This document shows positions 2,765-59,952 of a stretch of DNA of 64,000 nucleotides, piece by piece. Position 1 is the first letter of the stretch. Each line of letters opens with the position of its first letter. The notes beneath the pieces were generated by a model, which saw only the letters and a list, made by a program, of their open reading frames with translations, was not told where the DNA came from and did not search any database. The stretch covers positions 124,001 to 188,000 of the IMG/VR virus record IMGVR_UViG_3300031957_002643; one strand, written 5' to 3'. Both the position numbers and the translations under genes were made by a program.

Positions 2765-2914
2765 TCTAAATTAATGACTGCCGATACCAGTCAGTTACTA
2801 CTCGCTGCTTATCAGCATGACCGCAACCAAGGTGCTGCTCGGGTCCAAGGAACGAATTCCTCTTGATCTTTAACGACCATGGGACATATGCATGGTCAGG
2901 GATATTTATATGAC

Positions 2915-2944
2915 AAAGCCCCAAGGCTTTCGCCAAGGGGCTTT
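2915..2944. terminator. Hairpin terminator downstream of the tmRNA
   Basis: AAAGCCCC...GGGGCTTT stem with an internal hairpin, flanked by A/T runs. Confidence 0.7.
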
Positions 2945-3237
2945 TTCTGTTTCGAGGGTTGTCAGACCCCAAGTGGCTTACGCAGCGATGCGAGCCTCAA
3001 CGGCAAAATCATTATCATTTGCAGTTATTTAAGTTGTGCCTATAACGGGCCACACCCGGCAATCTCAACTTCGCTAATACACACCCATCGATCCTATTTC
3101 GCCCCCATCAGCAGCACATACTGTCGCCATGTTCGCTACGCCGGTCATGACCAAACCTTAAAGTATGTGCTGTTGGTGGAGGCGTCGGGTACTGCCCCCG
3201 AGTCTGGTCTGCTGTTCGCTCCGCATCATCAATTACA
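2945..3237 (-). ncRNA. ssrA: Permuted two-piece tmRNA (alphaproteobacterial type), tag ANDNDFAVEARIAA
   Basis: Acceptor piece ending GACTCGGGGGCAGTACCCGACGCCTCCACCA (CCA at 3174) comes first, then an intervening 11-bp hairpin, then the coding piece starting GGGGGCGAAATAGGATCGA (3106). Tag frame 3022..2978. TTGACA-17-TATAAG promoter at 3272..3244. Confidence 0.95.
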
Positions 3238-3268
3238 AATATACTTATAAGGGTTACCGATTCAAATG

Positions 3269-3555
3269 TCAACCGGTTTTTTGCTTATTGTCAGAATTTC
3301 TTCCAATATGGTATCCATCACAAAATAAGCACTTGTAGTTGCTGTAATAGTAGCCGTACTTTTTCTGCATTTTTTGTGCAGCCTTAGTGGCAGATTTCTT
3401 GCTTCCATAGGCAATCTTTGGCTGACCATTCGCATTTTCATGAGAGCGCCTACTACGAAGGCCTCGCATGTGACCTTTGCGCAGATTTCTCAAAAAGCGA
3501 GTTAAGGGGCCTTGGTCCAAAACAACCAGCCAGAGGTTTCTAAGTTTAATCATGT
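3269..3555 (-). CDS. Small basic hypothetical protein with C-x2-C..H motif (start approximate)
   Basis: C-terminal part of track ORF 3269..3742, YKCLFCDGYHIG. Confidence 0.55.
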
Positions 3556-14558: not shown

Positions 14559-14634
14559 TGGCAGGGGCATCAGGACTCGAACCCGAAGTTTCTGTTTTGG
14601 AGACAGACGTGTTAGCCATTAACACTATACCCCT
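14559..14634 (-). tRNA. trnW: tRNA-Trp(CCA)
   Basis: TCTGT-CTCCAAA-ACAGA, G73, CCA. Confidence 0.95.
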
Positions 14635-19109: not shown

Positions 19110-19778
19110 ATGAAACTCGAAATTAGACCCGGTGAAGGTGGTGAAGATTCTCGCCTCTTCATGAAGGACCTCGCATCAGCATACACGAAACTATTTTCCC
19201 GTTTCGGTTGAAAGTGGGACCGCACTGATCATGACAACATGATCATCCTTTATGTAACCAAGACGGACAAACGGTTGCATAATGAATCGGGCGGTCATCG
19301 TATCCAACGTATACCTCCAACTGAAAAACGTGGGCGTGTTCATACGTCAACGGTCACTGTAGCTGTGCTTGAAGACATCAAATCTGATCCAAGATATGAC
19401 ATGCGTGATGAAGAACACTTTTACAAAGAATGGTTTTCAGGAACCGGCAATGGTGGTCAACATCGCAACAAGCATCAAAACTCACTGCGATTATATCATA
19501 CACCAACGGGCTTGTTGACCACAGAACAAGGAAAAAGTCGTACATCGAATGAAGCAACCGCAATGAAGCGGATGAATAAGATGCTCGATGAGATGAAGTA
19601 TGGTGCATCTCAGAACGATTTGAACGATGATCGTCAATCAAAAATTGGTTCCGGTATGCGTGCTGACAAGATACGCACTTATCGTTTCCAAGACGATCAG
19701 GTCAATGATCACCAGACAGGAAAGAAAACAACTTGCAAACGAATTATGAGGGGGCACTTTGATGATCTTTGGAAATAA
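19110..19778 (+). CDS. Class I peptide chain release factor, RF1-type (PxT), lacking domain 1, with in-frame TGA at 19209..19211
   Basis: AGAGGA SD, then MKLEIRPGEGGEDSRLF...SRFG*KW continuing in the same frame into ESGGHRIQRIPPTEKRGRVHTST, GNGGQHRNK and KIRTYRF. Confidence 0.9.
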
Positions 19779-19786
19779 ATAGGGGT

Positions 19787-20242
19787 ATGAAGATTTTACA
19801 TTTATTCGAAAACAAATATTGGTATAACACAAAGACAAAACAATCTGTCTATTGGCGTGATCCATTGAAATATCATTCTGAATATTTAGAAACAGACCCG
19901 ACAAAATTTGGTATCGATCCAAACATATTCAAATCAGACTCAATATTCCATGATGAGGCTATGGACATGGCATTGGATATTGCATATGATAATAATTGGG
20001 TTCGGGTGGATATGGGAGCTGATTCAAATGCCGATGCTTCTTATATCGTTGGTGCCAATCAATCAGAATGCAGAACCGCCTTAAAATGGTTGGACCGCAA
20101 CGGAGACTTGAAAGGTATGGATGATGATTTGGAGGGGATACGTTTTCCGATATCCATTCAATGGTTGGACCCTTCGCTTGGTGGTAGAATGTTAAATGAT
20201 ATGACGGAAGTTGAAGAATTCATAAAAGGACGAATCAGATAA
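19787..20242 (+). CDS. Hypothetical protein (MKILHLFE N-terminus)
   Basis: ORF with ATAAATA 5 nt upstream. Confidence 0.75.
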   Translation: MKILHLFENKYWYNTKTKQSVYWRDPLKYHSEYLETDPTKFGIDPNIFKSDSIFHDEAMDMALDIAYDNNWVRVDMGADSNADASYIVGANQSECRTALKWLDRNGDLKGMDDDLEGIRFPISIQWLDPSLGGRMLNDMTEVEEFIKGRIR

Positions 20243-20279
20243 TCATTAATTTGTGTTATCTTTGGAAATAAATAGCTAC

Positions 20280-20663
20280 ATGAAACTTCAAGACCTATTC
20301 GAACGCATTGGTGAACAATTATATATCAAAAATCCTTCTTCTAGGAAACTTCAATCATATTTGAATGACAGGGCTGAAGGATTTGCTCGCGCCATTGTTG
20401 ATACTGATGGGAATTTTTACGTTTTCAATCCATATGAAATGATTCACATCGAATTCAGAAAAAGAATGGGCATCTTCATGGGTAAGGATGATCTCAGTGG
20501 AATTTCATTATATGCATTCAAAGATACCTTGGCTTGCCGATTGGACGATGTTGGTGATGAGGAGGTTCATCCCGAAATGACAAGACGTGTCAGGGCAAAC
20601 AAAAATATTGTTCGGGCTTATGGTGAAGATGTCACTTGTATCGATATTCACGGTGATCCCTGA
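20280..20663 (+). CDS. Hypothetical protein (MKLQDLFE N-terminus)
   Basis: ORF with ATAAATA 5 nt upstream. Confidence 0.75.
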   Translation: MKLQDLFERIGEQLYIKNPSSRKLQSYLNDRAEGFARAIVDTDGNFYVFNPYEMIHIEFRKRMGIFMGKDDLSGISLYAFKDTLACRLDDVGDEEVHPEMTRRVRANKNIVRAYGEDVTCIDIHGDP

Positions 20664-20998
20664 TTCAAAATTCGATCAGCAGGAACATGCGATGTTAAAA
20701 ATTCATGTTCACTGATATGCCAACTGTTGCAACAATCCTTTTTTGGGCATCGGTATATTGCTGGAATGATTTTTTCGATTTCGATTTCGATTTCCAAAAT
20801 CACGTGTGGCCAATCTGAACCTGCTTGGGTTCGAATGATGTATTCGACATCATCTGTTAGCCACACATATGGTGATTTGGGATAGTATGATAGCGGTGCG
20901 GTTAAACCATAAAAATCTGGATTGATCAATTTTGGAAAAATGCCATTTTCCAAAATTGAAGACAAATTCTCTGGTGGGGTGATATGATACAGGCGCAT
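20648..20998 (-). CDS. ADP-ribosyltransferase/Tpt1-like fold protein
   Basis: RLYHIT..NL.SIL..GI.P, VWLT, ILEI. Confidence 0.6.
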   Translation of the reverse strand: MRLYHITPPENLSSILENGIFPKLINPDFYGLTAPLSYYPKSPYVWLTDDVEYIIRTQAGSDWPHVILEIEIEIEKIIPAIYRCPKKDCCNSWHISEHEFLTSHVPADRILNQGSP

Positions 20999-21011
20999 AT
21001 TGTCTTATAAC

Positions 21012-21958
21012 TGAAGAAGCCCTCAGACACAAGGTCCAAGGGCTTCTAAAGCTTGGCCACATGCTATCCTTACAGACCCGCATGTACTCTTTTGAAAGCC
21101 TGAGATTAAGGCTTCTAACGATGACCTTTGGACCGCACCGAAGCCCTTGCGAGGCTTGTTAATCCGTTATCCACAAATTGGTGTCACCACTCAACTTGTA
21201 TTCACCAGTGCTGCCTTTTTTGAGGTGTGGCCTTTCACCTGTCACGCTGTGCTATTCGTCAGACTTTGATCCACCTGCCTTGCGAGCAGTTCGAGGTTGC
21301 AGCCCCTATGAACTCCGTTCTAACAATCATCTTTGGCTTGCGGCCTCCGATGAACCCTGTTCCTTACTAGGCAGGGTATTAAGCACTTTTCACACAACGC
21401 CGAACCAGTCTTTGCGTTTTATCTTCTGAGAAGGGGTTGAACCTTCGACAGATCGCTTTGAATGCGATTGCTCTACCACTGAGCTATCAGTAACCTACCT
21501 CGATGTGCTGGTCCTGTTGCTTCGCTACCTGTTGGTAACAAAATACAACACACCGACTGTCGTTCACCCGCTAAGGCTAATAAACCAAACTTCTGGATTA
21601 GTCATCACCACCAAAGTGATGCCGTCACCCATTGTTTTGCGAACCGCCCTTACCCGCTAAGGCTCGAACCTGTCCACTATCCGTTAACCATCACATTCAA
21701 CCGTTTAGCATGTGAATCTGCGGGTGCTAACCGCACAGGTCTCGGTGTTACCCAAACCTTCATCACCGGTCTTACTGCTTAGCGCATCCATGGCTGAATA
21801 CGCGCCCTAATAGGCTTGGCTCGGACTTGTATAGCTGAACCATTGCTGGCGCGAGTATGTAGGAATTCCCGCTTTGGGCTGGTTACCCAGCTTATTCTTA
21901 ATGGACGCTATACCGCCCAAACTCTTATTTCATTTCCCAGTGGCCGTAACCACATCGT
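21012..21958 (-). ncRNA. Large structured ncRNA, GOLLD-like, with an embedded tRNA-like domain
   Basis: ~950 nt without a credible ORF; TTTACA-17-TATATA promoter at 21994..21966; many minus-strand hairpins with GTAA/GCAA loops; 3' hairpin at about 21016..21046. Confidence 0.65.
21422..21493 (-). tRNA. tRNA-like element with UCA (opal-reading) anticodon; imperfect acceptor stem, no CCA
   Basis: TA-GCTC-AGTGGTA-GAGC, ATCGC-ATTCAAA-GCGAT, GAAGG-TTCAACC-CCTTC. Confidence 0.75.
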
Positions 21959-26165: not shown

Positions 26166-26260
26166 TGGCTCCCATCTGAGGTATCGAACCTCACCCGCGT
26201 CTCATCAACGCAGACCTCCGGTTAACAGCCGGGTACCTTCACCGTGCCAGTCCGATGGGA
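26166..26260 (-). tRNA. trnN: tRNA-Asn(GTT) with long variable arm
   Basis: CCCGG-CTGTTAA-CCGGA, ~24-nt variable region, 7-bp acceptor, GCCA. Confidence 0.8.
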
Positions 26261-35663: not shown

Positions 35664-36686
35664 TCATCCTGCCAACTTATTCGGAATTACTGCTTGGCCA
35701 TGCATCCAGTGCTTGACTGTCTGAACATGATCCTTCCGAACGAACTTTGCAACCTTTTTTCTGAATTCACCGTAGTAAAAAGAATCGGTGACGCGAACCA
35801 GATATCCTTCACTGATTCCCCAACGATCCTCATCCCAAAGCTTCTTGATTAGCTTTTCGTCCCATGGGCCACGATAAATGACATCAACCGGAGTGATTCC
35901 AAGAAGCTGAAACCATTCCAAGGTCTCATCCCACGAAAGGCACATGTTGCGATCATCCCAAACCGAGAAACCGGTAAAGTATGATTTTAATTCTTCATAT
36001 TCGATAGAATGCTGGGCATAGAGGTTTTCACCACAAACGCGCCAGAACTCAGGAATTTCATGGGCAATCTGAGACCAAAAGTTTTTCATCCAATCACGGG
36101 AAGGATGATGGCGGCTATCAACCGAACGAGCATGAATGTGATCGGAATACATCGTGGTATTCTCACCATCCATCTTTTCAGTGATCACGACTTCCTTTCC
36201 AATGAAGCCCTCAAGCGAATCAATCACACGATCATCATCATGGATGTTTTCAGACCAAGGCAAATGAGGGGTGCGCGGGTATTTCACCCAATGTGTGAAA
36301 TCCTTAAGGACATTGCCGCGTTCCAACACCTTTTGAACAGATGGGTCATAGAACAGTTCTCCTCGCAGGCGAGTGCCATTTGGCATGACCGGATTGCCCC
36401 ATTTGTCGTAGACATGATCGTCATACAGATGAGGAGGAACAATGATCTTAGTAATACCACAGGCAAGACGAACGTCTTCGACCGAAATTTCGGTGGTCTC
36501 GCATTGCATATGGTGATCGGCGCAAACCGATGCGCCATTTTCCAGATAGTATCCACCATCCGGCCAAAGGCGACGTTCTATGATATGATGAGCATCCTGA
36601 GCGGGCTTTGAACAGAAGACACACTGATGCCCATCGCGTTCAAAGACACGTTCTCTGAATTCATCTCTGGACAACAGTTTAAACAT
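35664..36686 (-). CDS. HNH domain plus RNA ligase (Rnl2-like) fusion
   Basis: N-terminal VFERDGHQCVFC..AHHI..NGASVC; C-terminal KYPRTPHLPWS, TEKMDGEN, GENLY, EGYLVR, KFVR. Confidence 0.85.
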   Translation of the reverse strand: MFKLLSRDEFRERVFERDGHQCVFCSKPAQDAHHIIERRLWPDGGYYLENGASVCADHHMQCETTEISVEDVRLACGITKIIVPPHLYDDHVYDKWGNPVMPNGTRLRGELFYDPSVQKVLERGNVLKDFTHWVKYPRTPHLPWSENIHDDDRVIDSLEGFIGKEVVITEKMDGENTTMYSDHIHARSVDSRHHPSRDWMKNFWSQIAHEIPEFWRVCGENLYAQHSIEYEELKSYFTGFSVWDDRNMCLSWDETLEWFQLLGITPVDVIYRGPWDEKLIKKLWDEDRWGISEGYLVRVTDSFYYGEFRKKVAKFVRKDHVQTVKHWMHGQAVIPNKLAG

Positions 36687-37099
36687 TTCATTTTGCCTTC
36701 TCGTACTGAACCACCTTACTGATTTTATCATAGATGTCAATCAGAATCGGCTCATTGGCACCTTCCAATTTTTCCAACAGTCGTTCCATTTCTTCCATAG
36801 TCAGGTCGAGACGAGGAACAATGACAACGGGTTTTAGTCGTGCTCTGATTTCCTGCCGTTCCCGATAGTTGGGACGATATTTATACAGACGCGAATACAC
36901 CGCAAACTGTCGTTGCATGATTTCCATAGGGTGCGTAATGCCACGAAAACGGCAACGTTCGGCAACCTTTTGATCAATGATGGATTTATCACTACCGAGT
37001 TTTCGGTTGCCATCCATGAACAGTTGGTCATTCGAAGTGATATATCCTTCTTTCGATTTGAAGGGATTTCGCTTCTGGTTACCTTGATGTTCGAAATGA

Positions 37100-45711: not shown

Positions 45712-46419
45712 ATGGAAAATAAGATCATATACAAAATTGGAAACCCAAAGCTAAGAGAAAAGTCTGAACTCGTAACAGACTTCTCAACGCTGGACATGTT
45801 TCTAATCCCCATGATGGAACGTGGCATTCAAGAAATGTGCGATCAGGGCGTTCGTGCCGCTGGTATCTCAGCCATTCAAGTTGGTGTTACCAAACAAGTT
45901 TTCATCATTACTCAAGAGTTTTCCCACAAAGTTGTGTGCAATCCAAAAATACTCTCATATGGGAAGAACTCCACCAGTATGTTAGAAGGTTGTTTGTCGG
46001 TTGATGATGAATTCTATGATATCACACGACCAGACAAGGTAAAAGTTGAATATCAAGACAAAACTGGCAAAACCATCAAGGAAACGATCAAAGGCTTCGA
46101 GGCACGTGTCTTCCAACACGAACTGGATCACCTTCATGGTATCATGATGCCAGACCGTGTTCTATTTGACGATGCTCTGATTGATGCGTGTATCAATCAT
46201 GATAATGATCGGATCGTCGAAATAGAATTAGATCGTAAAGAAGTAAATGATGAATTTGCAGTACATTGGACAACCCAAGTATTAAAAAAGTATGGACTTG
46301 AAAATAATACTGGACAAATTAGTGTTAGACGTATAAAAGAGATTTCAGATAGAAATCTTGCAATCAAAAAGATAAGACTGAAGGCGATAACTGATGAAGT
46401 ACAAATTTCCGACGATTGA
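45712..46419 (+). CDS. def: Peptide deformylase with C-terminal extension
   Basis: GISAIQVG, EGCLS, QHELDHLHG. Confidence 0.95.
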   Translation: MENKIIYKIGNPKLREKSELVTDFSTLDMFLIPMMERGIQEMCDQGVRAAGISAIQVGVTKQVFIITQEFSHKVVCNPKILSYGKNSTSMLEGCLSVDDEFYDITRPDKVKVEYQDKTGKTIKETIKGFEARVFQHELDHLHGIMMPDRVLFDDALIDACINHDNDRIVEIELDRKEVNDEFAVHWTTQVLKKYGLENNTGQISVRRIKEISDRNLAIKKIRLKAITDEVQISDD

Positions 46420-47587
46420 GCACATCGATCAAGTTCGCGATGCCATCGCGGACGTTGAGGGCATGGGCGAAGTTGATAAAGGAAAATTTATCATCTTCGA
46501 TTATGTCGTTGCTTTTGCTGACACTTTTCCTCCGGTTGAAACTGATGTGGACGCGATTCGTCGTGAATGTCGTGGTATCACGTTCGACAAGGAAACCGGT
46601 GAAATTATTCGTCGTCCGTTCCACAAGTTTTTCAACGTCAACGAACGTGATGAAACTCGCATGGAACTGATTGATGTGAAGCAGCCGCATGTTGTTTTGC
46701 ACAAGTATGATGGTTCCATGATCGCACCGGTAATTGTTGATGGTGAGATTCTTTGGGGTACTCGTAAGATTGCACAAGAATTCCATGAACTTGTTGCAGC
46801 ACATGTTGCGCGGTCTGATGAAGATTATGTTGGACTGGTCGAATGGTGCACCAAGATCGGTGCAACTCCGATGTTTGAATTTATGTCACCTGACAAACAA
46901 ATTGTGGTCGAACACAAGCGTGAAGAACTTCGTCTGCTTGCGGTTCGTGCCATGAAGTCCGGTAATTACTTCACGCAAAATATGATCGAGAATCTTCATG
47001 TTCGTTTCAATGTTCCGATTGCTGGTCAAGCATTCGATTCGGTTGATAGTCTTTCCGACTTCATTCCGTTCGTGCGTAATCTGAAAGATGATCGTGAAGG
47101 TGTTGTCATTCGCTTCGAGGACGGACATCACGTCAAGCTGAAGACCGAACAATATACTGCGGCACACCGTGCAAAAGAGCTTCTTGTTGATAAGGACGTG
47201 GTTAAAATGATCCTACACGATACGGTTGATGACATCATGCCTTATATTGGTATTGATGATCAAAAATCAGTCGAGCGTTTCAAGGACAAAATTTGCCGTG
47301 GTATTCGCGAAACGGCTGAAGAGATGTTCCGTTTTGCTGGTGAATTGCGTGATAACGGTATGACTGTTGGAGAGATTGCAAACAGCGATGAACTCAAGGC
47401 ATATCCGCATCGAATGCTTGTTTCGGTAGTTATGCGGGCCGTGCGCGGCGCTTCCGTTGACGAGATCGAAAATTCAATCTTGATTGTTCTGCGAAAGTGG
47501 ACTGGATCGGGACCGCGTGTCGATTCAATTCGTCCTGTTTTCGGCGGGCATCGCTTTTCTGATCGCGGGCCTTCCGACGAAGAATAG
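46394..47587 (+). CDS. RNA ligase 1 (T4 RnlA-like)
   Basis: RECRGITF, RRPFHKFFN, KYDGSMI, FEF, EGVVIRF, KLKT. Confidence 0.9.
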   Translation: MKYKFPTIEHIDQVRDAIADVEGMGEVDKGKFIIFDYVVAFADTFPPVETDVDAIRRECRGITFDKETGEIIRRPFHKFFNVNERDETRMELIDVKQPHVVLHKYDGSMIAPVIVDGEILWGTRKIAQEFHELVAAHVARSDEDYVGLVEWCTKIGATPMFEFMSPDKQIVVEHKREELRLLAVRAMKSGNYFTQNMIENLHVRFNVPIAGQAFDSVDSLSDFIPFVRNLKDDREGVVIRFEDGHHVKLKTEQYTAAHRAKELLVDKDVVKMILHDTVDDIMPYIGIDDQKSVERFKDKICRGIRETAEEMFRFAGELRDNGMTVGEIANSDELKAYPHRMLVSVVMRAVRGASVDEIENSILIVLRKWTGSGPRVDSIRPVFGGHRFSDRGPSDEE

Positions 47588-59658: not shown

Positions 59659-59952
59659 GTGGGTGTGGCGAAATGGTAGACGCGACAGACTTATAGTGAT
59701 TGAGTGCTCTCTTAGAAATAGGAGATGTAGAACTGCTCAAATTCGGGGAAACCTGTAAAATGGCAATCCCGAGCCAAGCTTTCCTGAAAAGGATTGAAGG
59801 TGTAGAGACTAGACGGGCAGCATCTAAGTTGGGAAACCAATATGATGAAGGGATAGTCCAGACTACAAACCGTAATGGGCAGCGAAAGCTGTAGTTAGTA
59901 CGAAAATCTGTTTCCTTATGGAGTGGGGGTTCGAGTCCCCCCACCCACACCA
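59659..59952 (+). tRNA. trnL: tRNA-Leu(TAA), interrupted (exons 59659..59692 and 59903..59952)
   Basis: Spliced anticodon arm ACAGA-CTTAAAA-TCTGT; acceptor GTGGGTG/CACCCAC; ACCA. Confidence 0.95.
59693..59902 (+). mobile_element. Group I intron (IC3/trnL-type), 210 nt, no ORF
   Basis: 5' exon ends in U and intron ends in G; core elements AATTCGGGGAAACC, AATCCCGAGC, GTAGAGACTAGA, GAAGGGATAGTCC. Confidence 0.93.

What the first reader, a model, noticed from the sequence alone, without database searches (positions are those of the whole stretch)
21422..21493. tRNA-like domain with a UCA anticodon embedded in the large RNA, 2.2 kb from the UGA-interrupted release factor
Seen: intact D, anticodon (loop ATTCAAA, anticodon at 21461..21459) and T arms and a short variable loop (so not tRNA-Sec). 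The acceptor stem has only 4 good pairs plus a mismatch or bulge, and there is no CCA. Inference: either an excised opal suppressor that switches on the phage RF, or a non-chargeable mimic displayed on the large RNA that binds UGA-stalled ribosomes or decoys nucleases. The large RNA, UCA element and RF could form one undescribed stop-codon control system.
Basis: partly seen in the sequence, partly recalled or inferred. Interest (0 to 1): 0.88.

Follow-up and report, generated by a model that had tools for sequence, protein, structure and literature searches.

The report
UCA tRNA-like module inside GOLLD RNA
A phage's giant structured GOLLD RNA carries a tRNA-shaped module in its known variable linker, here with an anticodon matching the UGA stop codon, but about 60 relatives show that this anticodon changes freely and is not tied to the nearby UGA-interrupted release-factor gene, so the proposed stop-codon control system is not supported.

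Summary
A 72-nt cloverleaf with anticodon UCA lies at 21422-21493 (-), found by both ARAGORN and Rfam (55 bits). It sits inside a GOLLD RNA (RF02032, 177 bits), in the linker where embedded tRNAs are already documented.

- **Anticodon variation:** among 52 distinct homologous linker modules the anticodon varies almost as freely as shuffled labels on the GOLLD tree. GUU, UUU and CUU dominate. CUA, UUA and UCA each occur once.
- **No co-occurrence:** the release-factor gene belongs to a large family of phage mini-RF1 genes. An in-frame TGA at a conserved Trp codon is present in 16 of 18 distinct loci checked. About 10 of these loci lie next to a GOLLD, and only this window has UCA. Its sister has CCU, another relative has no linker tRNA, and the rest have GUU or UUU.

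The family's modules keep perfect D, anticodon and T arms but only a 4-bp acceptor stub and no CCA. All 19 other tRNAs of this phage encode CCA. TGA stops are not depleted here.

Most likely the element is a tethered tRNA-like cassette whose UCA is incidental. A suppressor role in this one phage is not excluded (about 10-15%).

The parts
21422..21493 (-). tRNA-like module in the GOLLD linker. Anticodon UCA at 21461-21459, 6 of 7 acceptor pairs, no encoded CCA.
   Evidence: ARAGORN. Rfam tRNA 55 bits. Sequence read directly. Homologous modules at the same position in 51 other distinct GOLLDs.
21097..21556 (-). GOLLD RNA conserved 3' domain (Rfam model span), which encloses the tRNA-like module.
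   Evidence: RF02032 177.4 bits against a gathering score of 150, model 1-416 complete. Alignable with the GOLLDs of phages MD18 and Phosso, L004 and L091.
21557..21935 (-). GOLLD variable 5' domain. The 5' boundary is approximate. The whole RNA is about 840 nt.
   Evidence: Conservation with L091 (83% mean column identity) and with L004, MD18 and Phosso runs from about 21935 down to 21095 and stops there. No long ORF on either strand.
19110..19778 (+). Mini-RF1 gene. It lacks domain 1, has PPT and GGQ motifs, and has an in-frame TGA at 19209-19211 at a conserved Trp position. It is context, not part of the GOLLD element.
   Evidence: The two pieces were searched apart. The N piece hits PCRF and RF1 model positions 108-133. 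The C piece hits RF1 positions 166-334 (4e-44). The same TGA is found in 15 further distinct loci.
14559..14634 (-). Phage tRNA-Trp(CCA) with encoded CCA. It is a candidate near-cognate reader of the RF's UGA.
   Evidence: ARAGORN and Rfam, sequence. The sister locus L091 also has a tRNA-Trp(CCA) about 7 kb from its RF. The reading role is inference.

Best explanation
The element is the linker tRNA-like cassette of a phage GOLLD RNA, a known feature of that family.

**Shown.**
- A conserved RNA of about 840 nt lies on the minus strand (transcription itself is inferred from the Rfam match and the conservation).
- Between its 5' domain and its conserved 3' domain lies a slot flanked by the conserved sequences CAGCACAUC...GUAGGUU and AAAACGCAAAGACUG.
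- In this clade the slot holds a tRNA body with intact D, anticodon and T arms and a canonical anticodon loop, but usually only a 4-bp acceptor stub and no CCA.
- The cassette turns over quickly, both by point changes in the anticodon loop and by exchange of the whole cassette.
- The window's copy belongs to a neighbourhood of Arg-type NCU cassettes. Its sister L091 has CCU, and phages MD18, MAL1 and Phosso have UCU.

**Inferred.**
- The UCA state is an incidental, lineage-specific variant (U36 to A36 on an NCU background), not a dedicated partner of the release-factor gene.
- The module stays tethered to GOLLD and presents a tRNA elbow and anticodon arm to some tRNA-recognising partner on the multimeric GOLLD cage.
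- The RF's UGA is an old, family-wide feature. It is most simply read through at low level as Trp by near-cognate tRNA-Trp(CCA), which the phage itself encodes. The following base is A or C, the leaky UGA contexts known from E. coli.
For: - **Location:** the match lies in the GOLLD linker. Linker tRNAs are described in PMC12286853, PMC12990946 (tRNA-Phe in J13/15, 'inhibited storage') and PMC6582537 (a pseudo-tRNA inside GOLLD, no separate transcript on Northern blot).
- **Homologs:** 76 further loci have a T arm directly upstream of the GOLLD motif, and 14 of 16 sampled reach the GOLLD gathering score.
- **Anticodons among 52 distinct modules:** GUU 19, UUU 11, CUU 4, then UGU, UCU, AUG and many singletons including CUA, UUA and UCA.
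- **Tree:** on the GOLLD 3'-domain tree the anticodon needs 30 changes on 58 tips, against 33.0 for shuffled labels. The window pairs with L091 (CCU), SH-aLRT 99.
- **Fast turnover:** phiCbK and Magneto differ only in the anticodon loop. L021 and L023 sit at zero branch length on the 3'-domain tree but carry different cassettes.
- **Structure:** D, anticodon and T helices are 98.5% paired with many double-sided changes. Acceptor pairs 4-7 are 94-96% paired. Pairs 1-3 are unpaired in 29, 28 and 27 of 52. U33 is present in 52/52, a purine at 37 in 51/52, and CCA in 1/52.
- **Contrast within the phage:** all 19 other window tRNAs end in an encoded CCA.
- **RF is independent of UCA:** TGA sits at the same Trp site in 16 distinct loci, followed by A in 14 and C in 2. 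No other locus has a tRNA(UCA).
- **No recoding signature:** TGA ends 36% of ORFs here, against 33% and 39% in relatives without UCA. The RF is the only convincing TGA-interrupted gene in the 64 kb.
- **Singleton:** the exact UCA anticodon arm occurs in a tRNA context only in this contig among viral contigs.
Against: - The window's copy is more tRNA-like than most of its family. It has 6 of 7 acceptor pairs, a perfect loop with U33 and A37, and 55 bits. Its sister L091 has lost the acceptor stem. A released, CCA-repaired tRNA is therefore not excluded.
- The residue required at the RF's UGA is Trp, and C35-A36 are Trp-type anticodon positions, so the coincidence is suggestive.
- RF and GOLLD lie within 2-6 kb of each other in about 10 distinct loci, which could reflect a functional link of some kind.
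- Only 64 kb of a 335-kb contig and flanks of 10 kb or less elsewhere were examined. A tRNA(UCA) elsewhere in the relatives' genomes cannot be ruled out.
- Nothing here shows what the tethered module binds.
Confidence: 0.68

Rival explanations
1. Excised opal suppressor. RNase P and 3' processing release the module, the CCA-adding enzyme completes it, a synthetase charges it (TrpRS through C35-A36, or ArgRS from its NCU ancestry), and it raises read-through of the RF's UGA.
For: - Canonical loop with U33 and A37, UCA anticodon, 6 of 7 acceptor pairs, 55 bits.
- The UGA sits at a conserved Trp codon.
- From my own knowledge, not checked here: a T4 tRNA-Arg(UCU) derivative is a classical UGA suppressor, and T4 tRNAs lacking CCA are matured by host enzymes.
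- Relatives encode PolyA_pol/CCA-type nucleotidyltransferases near their RF.
Against: - UCA occurs in 1 of about 10 RF+GOLLD loci and 1 of 52 distinct modules.
- The RF's TGA is conserved without it.
- There is no CCA, while 19 of 19 other tRNAs encode it.
- A73, U20 and U1.G72 match no standard Trp or Arg determinant set (my knowledge of identity rules).
- TGA stops are not depleted.
- The acceptor top is unconstrained family-wide.
- In Mycobacterium no separate transcript of the GOLLD pseudo-tRNA was seen (PMC6582537).
Confidence: 0.12
2. Anticodon-nuclease decoy or bait, a family-level function. The GOLLD multimer displays many copies of an anticodon arm that soaks up host anticodon nucleases or other anticodon-loop enzymes. 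Anticodon turnover would track whichever host tRNA is under attack.
For: - The loop geometry is strictly kept (U33 52/52) while anticodon identity changes fast.
- The common anticodons (Lys UUU/CUU, Asn GUU, Arg UCU/CCU, Thr, Glu, Gln) are typical targets of known anticodon nucleases (my knowledge).
- The window encodes Rnl1-like and Rnl2-like RNA ligases, and relative L097 encodes RtcB. These are tRNA-repair functions.
- The acceptor end is dispensable.
Against: - This is purely circumstantial.
- A UCA loop would mimic only tRNA-Sec, an unlikely target.
- Some GOLLDs lack the module altogether.
- The same anticodons are also the ones AT-rich phages most often supply as real tRNAs.
Confidence: 0.15
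3. Tethered UGA reader. The non-chargeable UCA arm, still attached to GOLLD, docks in ribosomal A sites showing UGA. It would either recruit the cage to terminating ribosomes or compete with RF2.
For: GOLLD is reported to pull down ribosomes (cited in PMC12286853). The loop is canonical.
Against: - The same arguments of non-conservation apply.
- Other family members would then read Asn or Lys codons, which gives no coherent function.
- A-site entry without EF-Tu and an acceptor end is mechanistically unlikely (inference).
Confidence: 0.04
4. Decaying pseudo-tRNA. The module is a neutral remnant of a tRNA gene captured in the linker and has no function at all.
For: - The acceptor top is degenerate and there is no CCA.
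- Odd loops occur: G33 in phiCbK, and loops ARAGORN reads as 2- or 4-base anticodons.
- All three nonsense anticodons occur.
- Several GOLLDs lack the module.
Against: Three arms are 98.5% paired with 295 double-sided compensatory cells, against 106 in shuffles. G18/G19, the T loop and U33 are invariant or nearly so. That is strong purifying selection on the L-shape and the loop.
Confidence: 0.1

Closest known systems
GOLLD RNAs with a tRNA in the linker (Rfam RF02032; Kretsch et al. 2025, PMC12286853; Mycolicibacterium tRNA-Phe in J13/15, PMC12990946; Mycobacterium pseudo-tRNA, PMC6582537)
   Same: Same RNA family by covariance model. Same position of the insert, between the first hairpin of the Rfam model and the pseudoknotted core. 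Same phage and tRNA-array context. As in Mycobacterium, a pseudo-tRNA-like acceptor end.
   Different: The anticodon is a nonsense one (UCA). I found no report of that for GOLLD in the library searched. The clade-wide pattern seen here (4-bp acceptor stub, no CCA, near-random anticodon turnover) is not stated in the papers read.
Code-change modules of TGA-recoded 'Jade' phages: suppressor tRNA(UCA) + TrpRS + RF1 (bioRxiv 10.1101/2021.08.26.457843)
   Same: A phage carrying both an RF1-type gene and a UCA anticodon element within a few kb.
   Different: - Here the genome is not recoded. TGA ends about 36% of ORFs and only the RF has an in-frame TGA.
- In Jade phages the module itself is written in standard code, whereas here the RF is the interrupted gene.
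- No TrpRS was seen near the RF.
- The UCA element is not conserved among relatives.
prfB (RF2) autoregulatory in-frame UGA with +1 frameshift
   Same: A release-factor gene interrupted early by UGA, conserved across many lineages, which suggests translational autoregulation.
   Different: - No frameshift is needed here. The N and C pieces are in the same frame.
- The gene is RF1-type (PPT motif) and would not itself read UGA.
- The UGA replaces a conserved Trp codon.
tRNA-like domains built into larger RNAs (tmRNA tRNA-like domain, plant-virus 3' TLS, mascRNA precursors)
   Same: A tRNA-shaped fold carried by a larger functional RNA.
   Different: Those have functional acceptor ends (aminoacylated, or cleaved by RNase P) and no canonical anticodon loop, or a fixed one. 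Here it is the reverse: a canonical and variable anticodon loop with a degenerate acceptor end.

Membership tests
GOLLD RNA (RF02032) | Covariance-model score at or above the curated gathering score over the whole model | tested here: met
   177.4 bits against 150, model 1-416/416, E=3e-48.
GOLLD RNA (RF02032) | Conserved 3' domain plus a less conserved 5' domain, total above 800 nt | tested here: met
   Conservation with L091, L004, MD18 and Phosso extends about 380 nt 5' of the Rfam span. The total is about 840 nt.
GOLLD RNA (RF02032) | Phage or prophage context next to tRNA arrays | tested here: met
   20 tRNAs, a tmRNA and a tail sheath gene in the window. The contig is in IMG/VR.
GOLLD RNA (RF02032) | Assembly into a multimeric nanocage | not testable with these tools
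   Known only from cryo-EM of other members (PMC12286853).
tRNA (RF00005) | Cloverleaf with D, anticodon and T arms and a 7-nt anticodon loop with U33 | tested here: met
   55 bits. The arms were read directly. Family-wide these arms are 98.5% paired.
tRNA (RF00005) | 7-bp acceptor stem with a 3' NCCA end (encoded or added) that can be aminoacylated | tested here: inconclusive
   The window copy has 6 of 7 pairs (A3xA70) and no CCA. In the family, pairs 1-3 are unpaired in 27-29 of 52 and CCA occurs in 1 of 52. All 19 other window tRNAs encode CCA. Charging cannot be tested.
Opal suppressor tRNA | UCA anticodon in a canonical loop | tested here: met
   Loop AUUCAAA.
Opal suppressor tRNA | Recognisable amino-acid identity set | tested here: inconclusive
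   A73, U20, U1.G72 and A3xA70 fit neither the bacterial Trp set (G73) nor the Arg set (A20, U/G36). Only C35-A36 (Trp) or C35/A73 (Arg) match (identity rules from my knowledge).
Opal suppressor tRNA | Conserved together with genes that need UGA decoding | tested here: not met
   15 further distinct RF-TGA loci have no tRNA(UCA). UCA is a singleton among 52 modules. The genome is not recoded.
tRNA-Sec | Long variable arm and 8/5 or 9/4 acceptor/T geometry | tested here: not met
   5-nt variable loop and 7/5 geometry. The ARAGORN 'SeC' label follows from the anticodon alone.
Class I release factor RF1 (the neighbouring gene) | GGQ motif, P-x-T codon-recognition motif and domains 1-4 | tested here: inconclusive
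   GGQ and PPT are present. The best NCBIfam model is prfA (151 bits) but far below the equivalog cut-off of 400. Domain 1 (about the first 107 model positions) is absent and part of domain 2 is shortened. It is RF1-like, not a full RF1.
prfB-type programmed frameshift | In-frame UGA bypassed by a +1 shift | tested here: not met
   The RF1-homologous pieces before and after the TGA are in one frame in all loci.

The most novel reading that the evidence does not exclude
In this one phage lineage the GOLLD linker cassette has been co-opted. A U36-to-A36 change turned an Arg-type module into a UGA reader. Released or still tethered, it raises read-through (as Trp) of the conserved UGA gate in the phage's mini-RF1. 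That would link a nanocage RNA to control of translation termination. A broader version is that GOLLD linker modules are fast-evolving, displayed anticodon arms whose identity is the functional variable.
Probability: 0.1. Interest if true: 0.85.

Novelty: new member of a known kind. Interest (0 to 1): 0.38.

Why it matters
As filed, the finding is mostly explained. It is a GOLLD RNA with its known linker tRNA, and the link to the release factor is not supported. The follow-up turned up two things that matter more.

1. **The linker module is acceptor-truncated and swaps anticodon fast.** In this GOLLD clade it is under strong selection for the tRNA L-shape and a canonical anticodon loop, but not for an acceptor end, and it changes anticodon almost at random. 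This constrains hypotheses for the still unknown function of GOLLD. Display or bait fits better than a simple tRNA precursor.

2. **The neighbouring gene belongs to a large family of UGA-gated mini-RF1 genes.** These phage genes lack domain 1 and carry an in-frame UGA at a Trp codon across relatives as low as about 51% identical, in contigs up to 608 kb. I found no description of this in the library searched. It looks like a testable translational gate, analogous in spirit to the prfB frameshift.

Tried and rejected
- **Whole-genome TGA recoding: rejected.** Code-11 coding density is about 89% and TGA ends 36% of ORFs. Other TGA-bridged ORF pairs are shadows or neighbouring genes.
- **tRNA-Sec: rejected** on variable-loop length and arm geometry.
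- **prfB-like frameshift in the RF: rejected.** The pieces are in the same frame.
- **Wider RF search in viral contigs: unproductive.** The search for related loci with a two-sequence RF alignment returned only the same three loci. The wider family came from the search for homologous proteins and the look-up of encoding contigs instead.
- **Exact 17-nt UCA anticodon-arm scan: mostly chance hits.** The 7 viral hits are self plus 6 chance matches.
- **MFE folding of the isolated 72 nt: not informative.** It gave a non-cloverleaf fold with z=-1.6.
- **Hirsh-type U11-A24 in the phage tRNA-Trp: dropped.** It is present in the window copy but not in the sister's (C11-G24), and it is common in normal tRNA-Trp.
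- **Depletion of TGA stops in the UCA-bearing phage: none found**, from small samples.
- **Promoter and terminator scan around GOLLD: nothing above shuffled expectation**.
- **Papers not held:** Weinberg 2009 and Morgado 2020 could not be read.

Full report
**1. What is at the coordinates**

ARAGORN finds 20 tRNAs and a tmRNA in the window. One tRNA is at 21422-21493 on the minus strand with anticodon tca. Rfam's tRNA model matches the same 72 nt end to end at 55.0 bits.

Read directly, the element has:
- a 4-bp D stem with a GG loop;
- a 5-bp anticodon stem with loop AUUCAAA (U33, UCA at 21461-21459, A37);
- a 5-nt variable loop;
- a 5-bp T stem with loop UUCAACC;
- an acceptor stem with U1.G72, U2-A71, an A3xA70 mismatch and four Watson-Crick pairs;
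- discriminator A, followed by UAAAAC rather than CCA.

It is not tRNA-Sec, and ARAGORN's label follows only from the anticodon.

**2. The 'large RNA' is GOLLD**

The element lies inside a complete match to GOLLD (RF02032, 21097-21556 minus strand, 177.4 bits). It sits in the unpaired linker between the first hairpin and the pseudoknotted core. Conservation with relatives extends a further ~380 nt upstream, giving an RNA of about 840 nt.

Embedded tRNAs in this linker are already described:
- A tRNA-Phe in J13/15 of a Mycolicibacterium GOLLD, with an 'inhibited storage' idea (PMC12990946).
- A pseudo-tRNA inside a Mycobacterium GOLLD with no separate transcript on Northern blot (PMC6582537).

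The window is part of a 335-kb IMG/VR contig. It carries a tail sheath gene, an alpha-type permuted tmRNA, a group I intron and two RNA ligases.

**3. Homologous modules and their anticodons**

GenBank phages with related GOLLDs carry a module at the same place:
- Phaeobacter phage MD18 and DSS3_MAL1: UCU.
- Sinorhizobium phage Phosso: UCU.
- Caulobacter phiCbK: 'UCC' in a loop with G33.
- CcrMagneto: CUU.

phiCbK and Magneto differ only in the loop. Roseobacter phage DSS3P8 has no module.

A scan of IMG/VR for a T arm directly followed by the GOLLD motif AAMGCAAAGACTG gave 78 loci. One is self and one is a chance match. Of 16 loci sampled, 14 reach the GOLLD gathering score. One of the other two runs off the end of its locus.

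The flanks CAGCACAUC...GUAGGUU and AAAACGCAAAGACUG are conserved throughout.

Among 52 distinct modules the anticodons are GUU 19, UUU 11, CUU 4, UGU 2, UCU 2 and AUG 2. Singletons are AUU, UAU, GAU, UUC, CCA, UUG, CUA, UUA and UCA. A few loops are irregular.

On a maximum-likelihood tree of the GOLLD 3' domain, with the module excluded, the 14 anticodon states need 30 changes on 58 tips. The minimum possible is 13, the shuffled mean is 33.0, and only 9 of 200 shuffles are as low. Both routes of change are visible:
- Loop point changes on one body: L047 UGU against L078 GUU, and phiCbK against Magneto.
- Whole-cassette exchange: L021 and L023 sit at zero branch length on the 3'-domain tree but carry different cassettes.

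The window's sister is L091 (SH-aLRT 99, 82% identity). Its module has anticodon CCU on a nearly identical anticodon stem. The window's UCA therefore sits among Arg-type NCU cassettes and differs from them at position 36.

**4. What kind of tRNA is it?**

Counted on an alignment of the 52 modules:
- The D, anticodon and T helices are each about 98.5% paired.
- There are 295 cells with changes on both sides, against 106 in shuffles.
- The covariation score is 0.68 against 0.21, and no shuffle in 500 reaches it.
- Acceptor pairs 4-7 are 94-96% paired.
- Acceptor pairs 1-3 are unpaired in 29, 28 and 27 of 52 sequences. That is about what chance gives.

U33 is present in 52/52, a purine at position 37 in 51/52, and an encoded CCA in 1/52. 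G never occurs as the discriminator. By contrast, all 19 other tRNAs of this window end in an encoded CCA.

The family is therefore under strong selection for the tRNA L-shape and anticodon loop, but not for a functional acceptor end. The window's own copy, with 6 of 7 acceptor pairs, is at the better end of the range. Its sister's acceptor stem is essentially gone.

**5. The release factor**

- 19110-19208 (33 aa) matches PCRF and RF1 model positions 108-133.
- 19212-19775 (188 aa) matches RF1 positions 166-334 (4e-44) and contains PPT and GGQ.
- Domain 1 is absent.

A search of 5.8 billion proteins found 4883 hits at E<=1e-10 in the 103-329-aa band. Among the best 120, 104 are 141-196 aa, that is, ORFs called from a start after the stop. 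The other 16 are 218-240 aa with W at the site.

I checked the DNA of 18 distinct loci.
- **TGA at the conserved Trp position in 16:** the window, L091 (76% identical), L089 (70%), L092, L096-L099 (52-60% identical, contigs up to 608 kb), seven distinct GOLLD-linked loci, and L227. The next base is A in 14 and C in 2.
- **One locus (L226)** has TGG there and a TGA four codons downstream.
- **One locus (L228)** is uninterrupted.

None of the other loci has a tRNA(UCA) within the DNA fetched, which was up to 10 kb on each side.

**6.

RF and GOLLD lie within about 2-6 kb of each other in about 10 distinct loci. The linker anticodons there are:
- UCA: the window only.
- CCU: L091.
- No module: L004/L005.
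- GUU: L026, L031/L044, L034, L049, L057.
- UUU: L029, L077.

Orientation is not conserved either. The two genes are convergent here and on the same strand elsewhere.

The exact UCA anticodon arm occurs in a tRNA context only in this contig among IMG/VR contigs. The genome is not recoded. TGA stop usage is 36% here, the same as in relatives without UCA (33% and 39%), and orthologues gain TGA stops as often as they lose them.

The third, suppression or ribosome binding, needs experiments.

**7. Most likely mechanism**

Shown: the element is the GOLLD linker cassette, homologous to fast-changing cassettes in relatives. The RF's UGA is older than, and independent of, the UCA state.

Inferred:
- The module stays tethered and presents an elbow and anticodon arm on the GOLLD multimer.
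- UCA is an incidental variant.
- The RF's UGA is read as Trp at low level by near-cognate tRNA-Trp(CCA), which both this phage and its sister encode. The UGA-A and UGA-C contexts are known to terminate poorly in E. coli (my knowledge).

I put about 0.68 on this reading. I put about 0.12 on a genuine excised suppressor in this one phage. Lesser weights go to a nuclease-decoy role, a tethered UGA reader, or a functionless remnant.

**8. Comparison and novelty**

This is a new member of a known kind: a GOLLD RNA with a linker tRNA. A nonsense anticodon in that slot is a new detail, but CUA and UUA occur there too, so it looks like part of the slot's general variability.

It resembles the suppressor-tRNA + RF1 code-change modules of TGA-recoded Jade phages (bioRxiv 10.1101/2021.08.26.457843) only superficially. 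Here nothing but the RF is interrupted, and the pairing is not conserved.

I found no paper in the searched library on suppressor anticodons in GOLLD or on UGA-interrupted phage RF1 genes. That is absence from one library, not proof of novelty.

Noticed in passing
window 19110-19778 (+); also L091, L089, L092, L096-L099, L026, L029, L031, L034, L044, L049, L057, L077, L226-L228: A large family of phage mini-RF1 genes: no domain 1, PPT and GGQ kept. An in-frame TGA sits at a conserved Trp codon in 16 of 18 distinct loci checked, followed by A or C. One locus has the TGA shifted 4 codons downstream and one is uninterrupted. Gene callers mostly report only the C-terminal ~180 aa. It looks like a conserved translational gate. 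I found no description in the library searched.
   Followed up: partly
window 19110-21935; L026, L029, L031, L034, L044, L049, L057, L077, L089, L091: The mini-RF1 gene and GOLLD lie within about 2-6 kb of each other in about 10 distinct phage loci, in varying orientation. This may be no more than a shared 'translation island' with the tRNA arrays.
   Followed up: partly
L010-L087 (linker modules), L006 vs L007, L021 vs L023, L047 vs L078: The GOLLD linker slot turns over very fast. Near-identical GOLLDs carry different anticodon loops or entirely different tRNA cassettes. All three nonsense anticodons occur (CUA in L014, UUA in L019, UCA in the window).
   Followed up: yes
window 46394-47587 (+) and 35664-36740 (-): A T4 Rnl1-type RNA ligase (PF09511, 3.5e-30) and an Rnl2-type RNA ligase (PF09414, 5.9e-31). 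This is tRNA-repair-type machinery in the same tRNA-rich region. Relative L097 has RtcB near its RF.
   Followed up: no
window 2887-3276 (-): A phage-encoded two-piece (permuted, alphaproteobacterial-type) tmRNA with tag ANDNDFAVEARIAA. Similar tmRNAs sit next to GOLLD in phages MD18, MAL1, DSS3P8 and the phiCbK group. This hints at an alphaproteobacterial host.
   Followed up: no
window 59691-59875 (+): A group I intron match just at the gathering score (50.8 bits against 50).
   Followed up: no
window 26166-26260 (-): ARAGORN calls a 95-nt tRNA-Asn(GUU) that Rfam does not report at gathering score. It could be an intron-containing or aberrant tRNA next to a normal tRNA-Asn.
   Followed up: no
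L099 11024-13272: Three further partial matches to the GGQ half of the RF (46-49% identity) lie just downstream of the RF gene in a 608-kb contig.
   Followed up: no
L096 (107-kb JGI contig), within 10 kb of its TGA-interrupted RF: The tRNA array includes a tRNA with a CUA (amber) anticodon, together with PTH2 and a CCA-adding-type nucleotidyltransferase. The suppressor type does not match the RF's interrupting codon.
   Followed up: no
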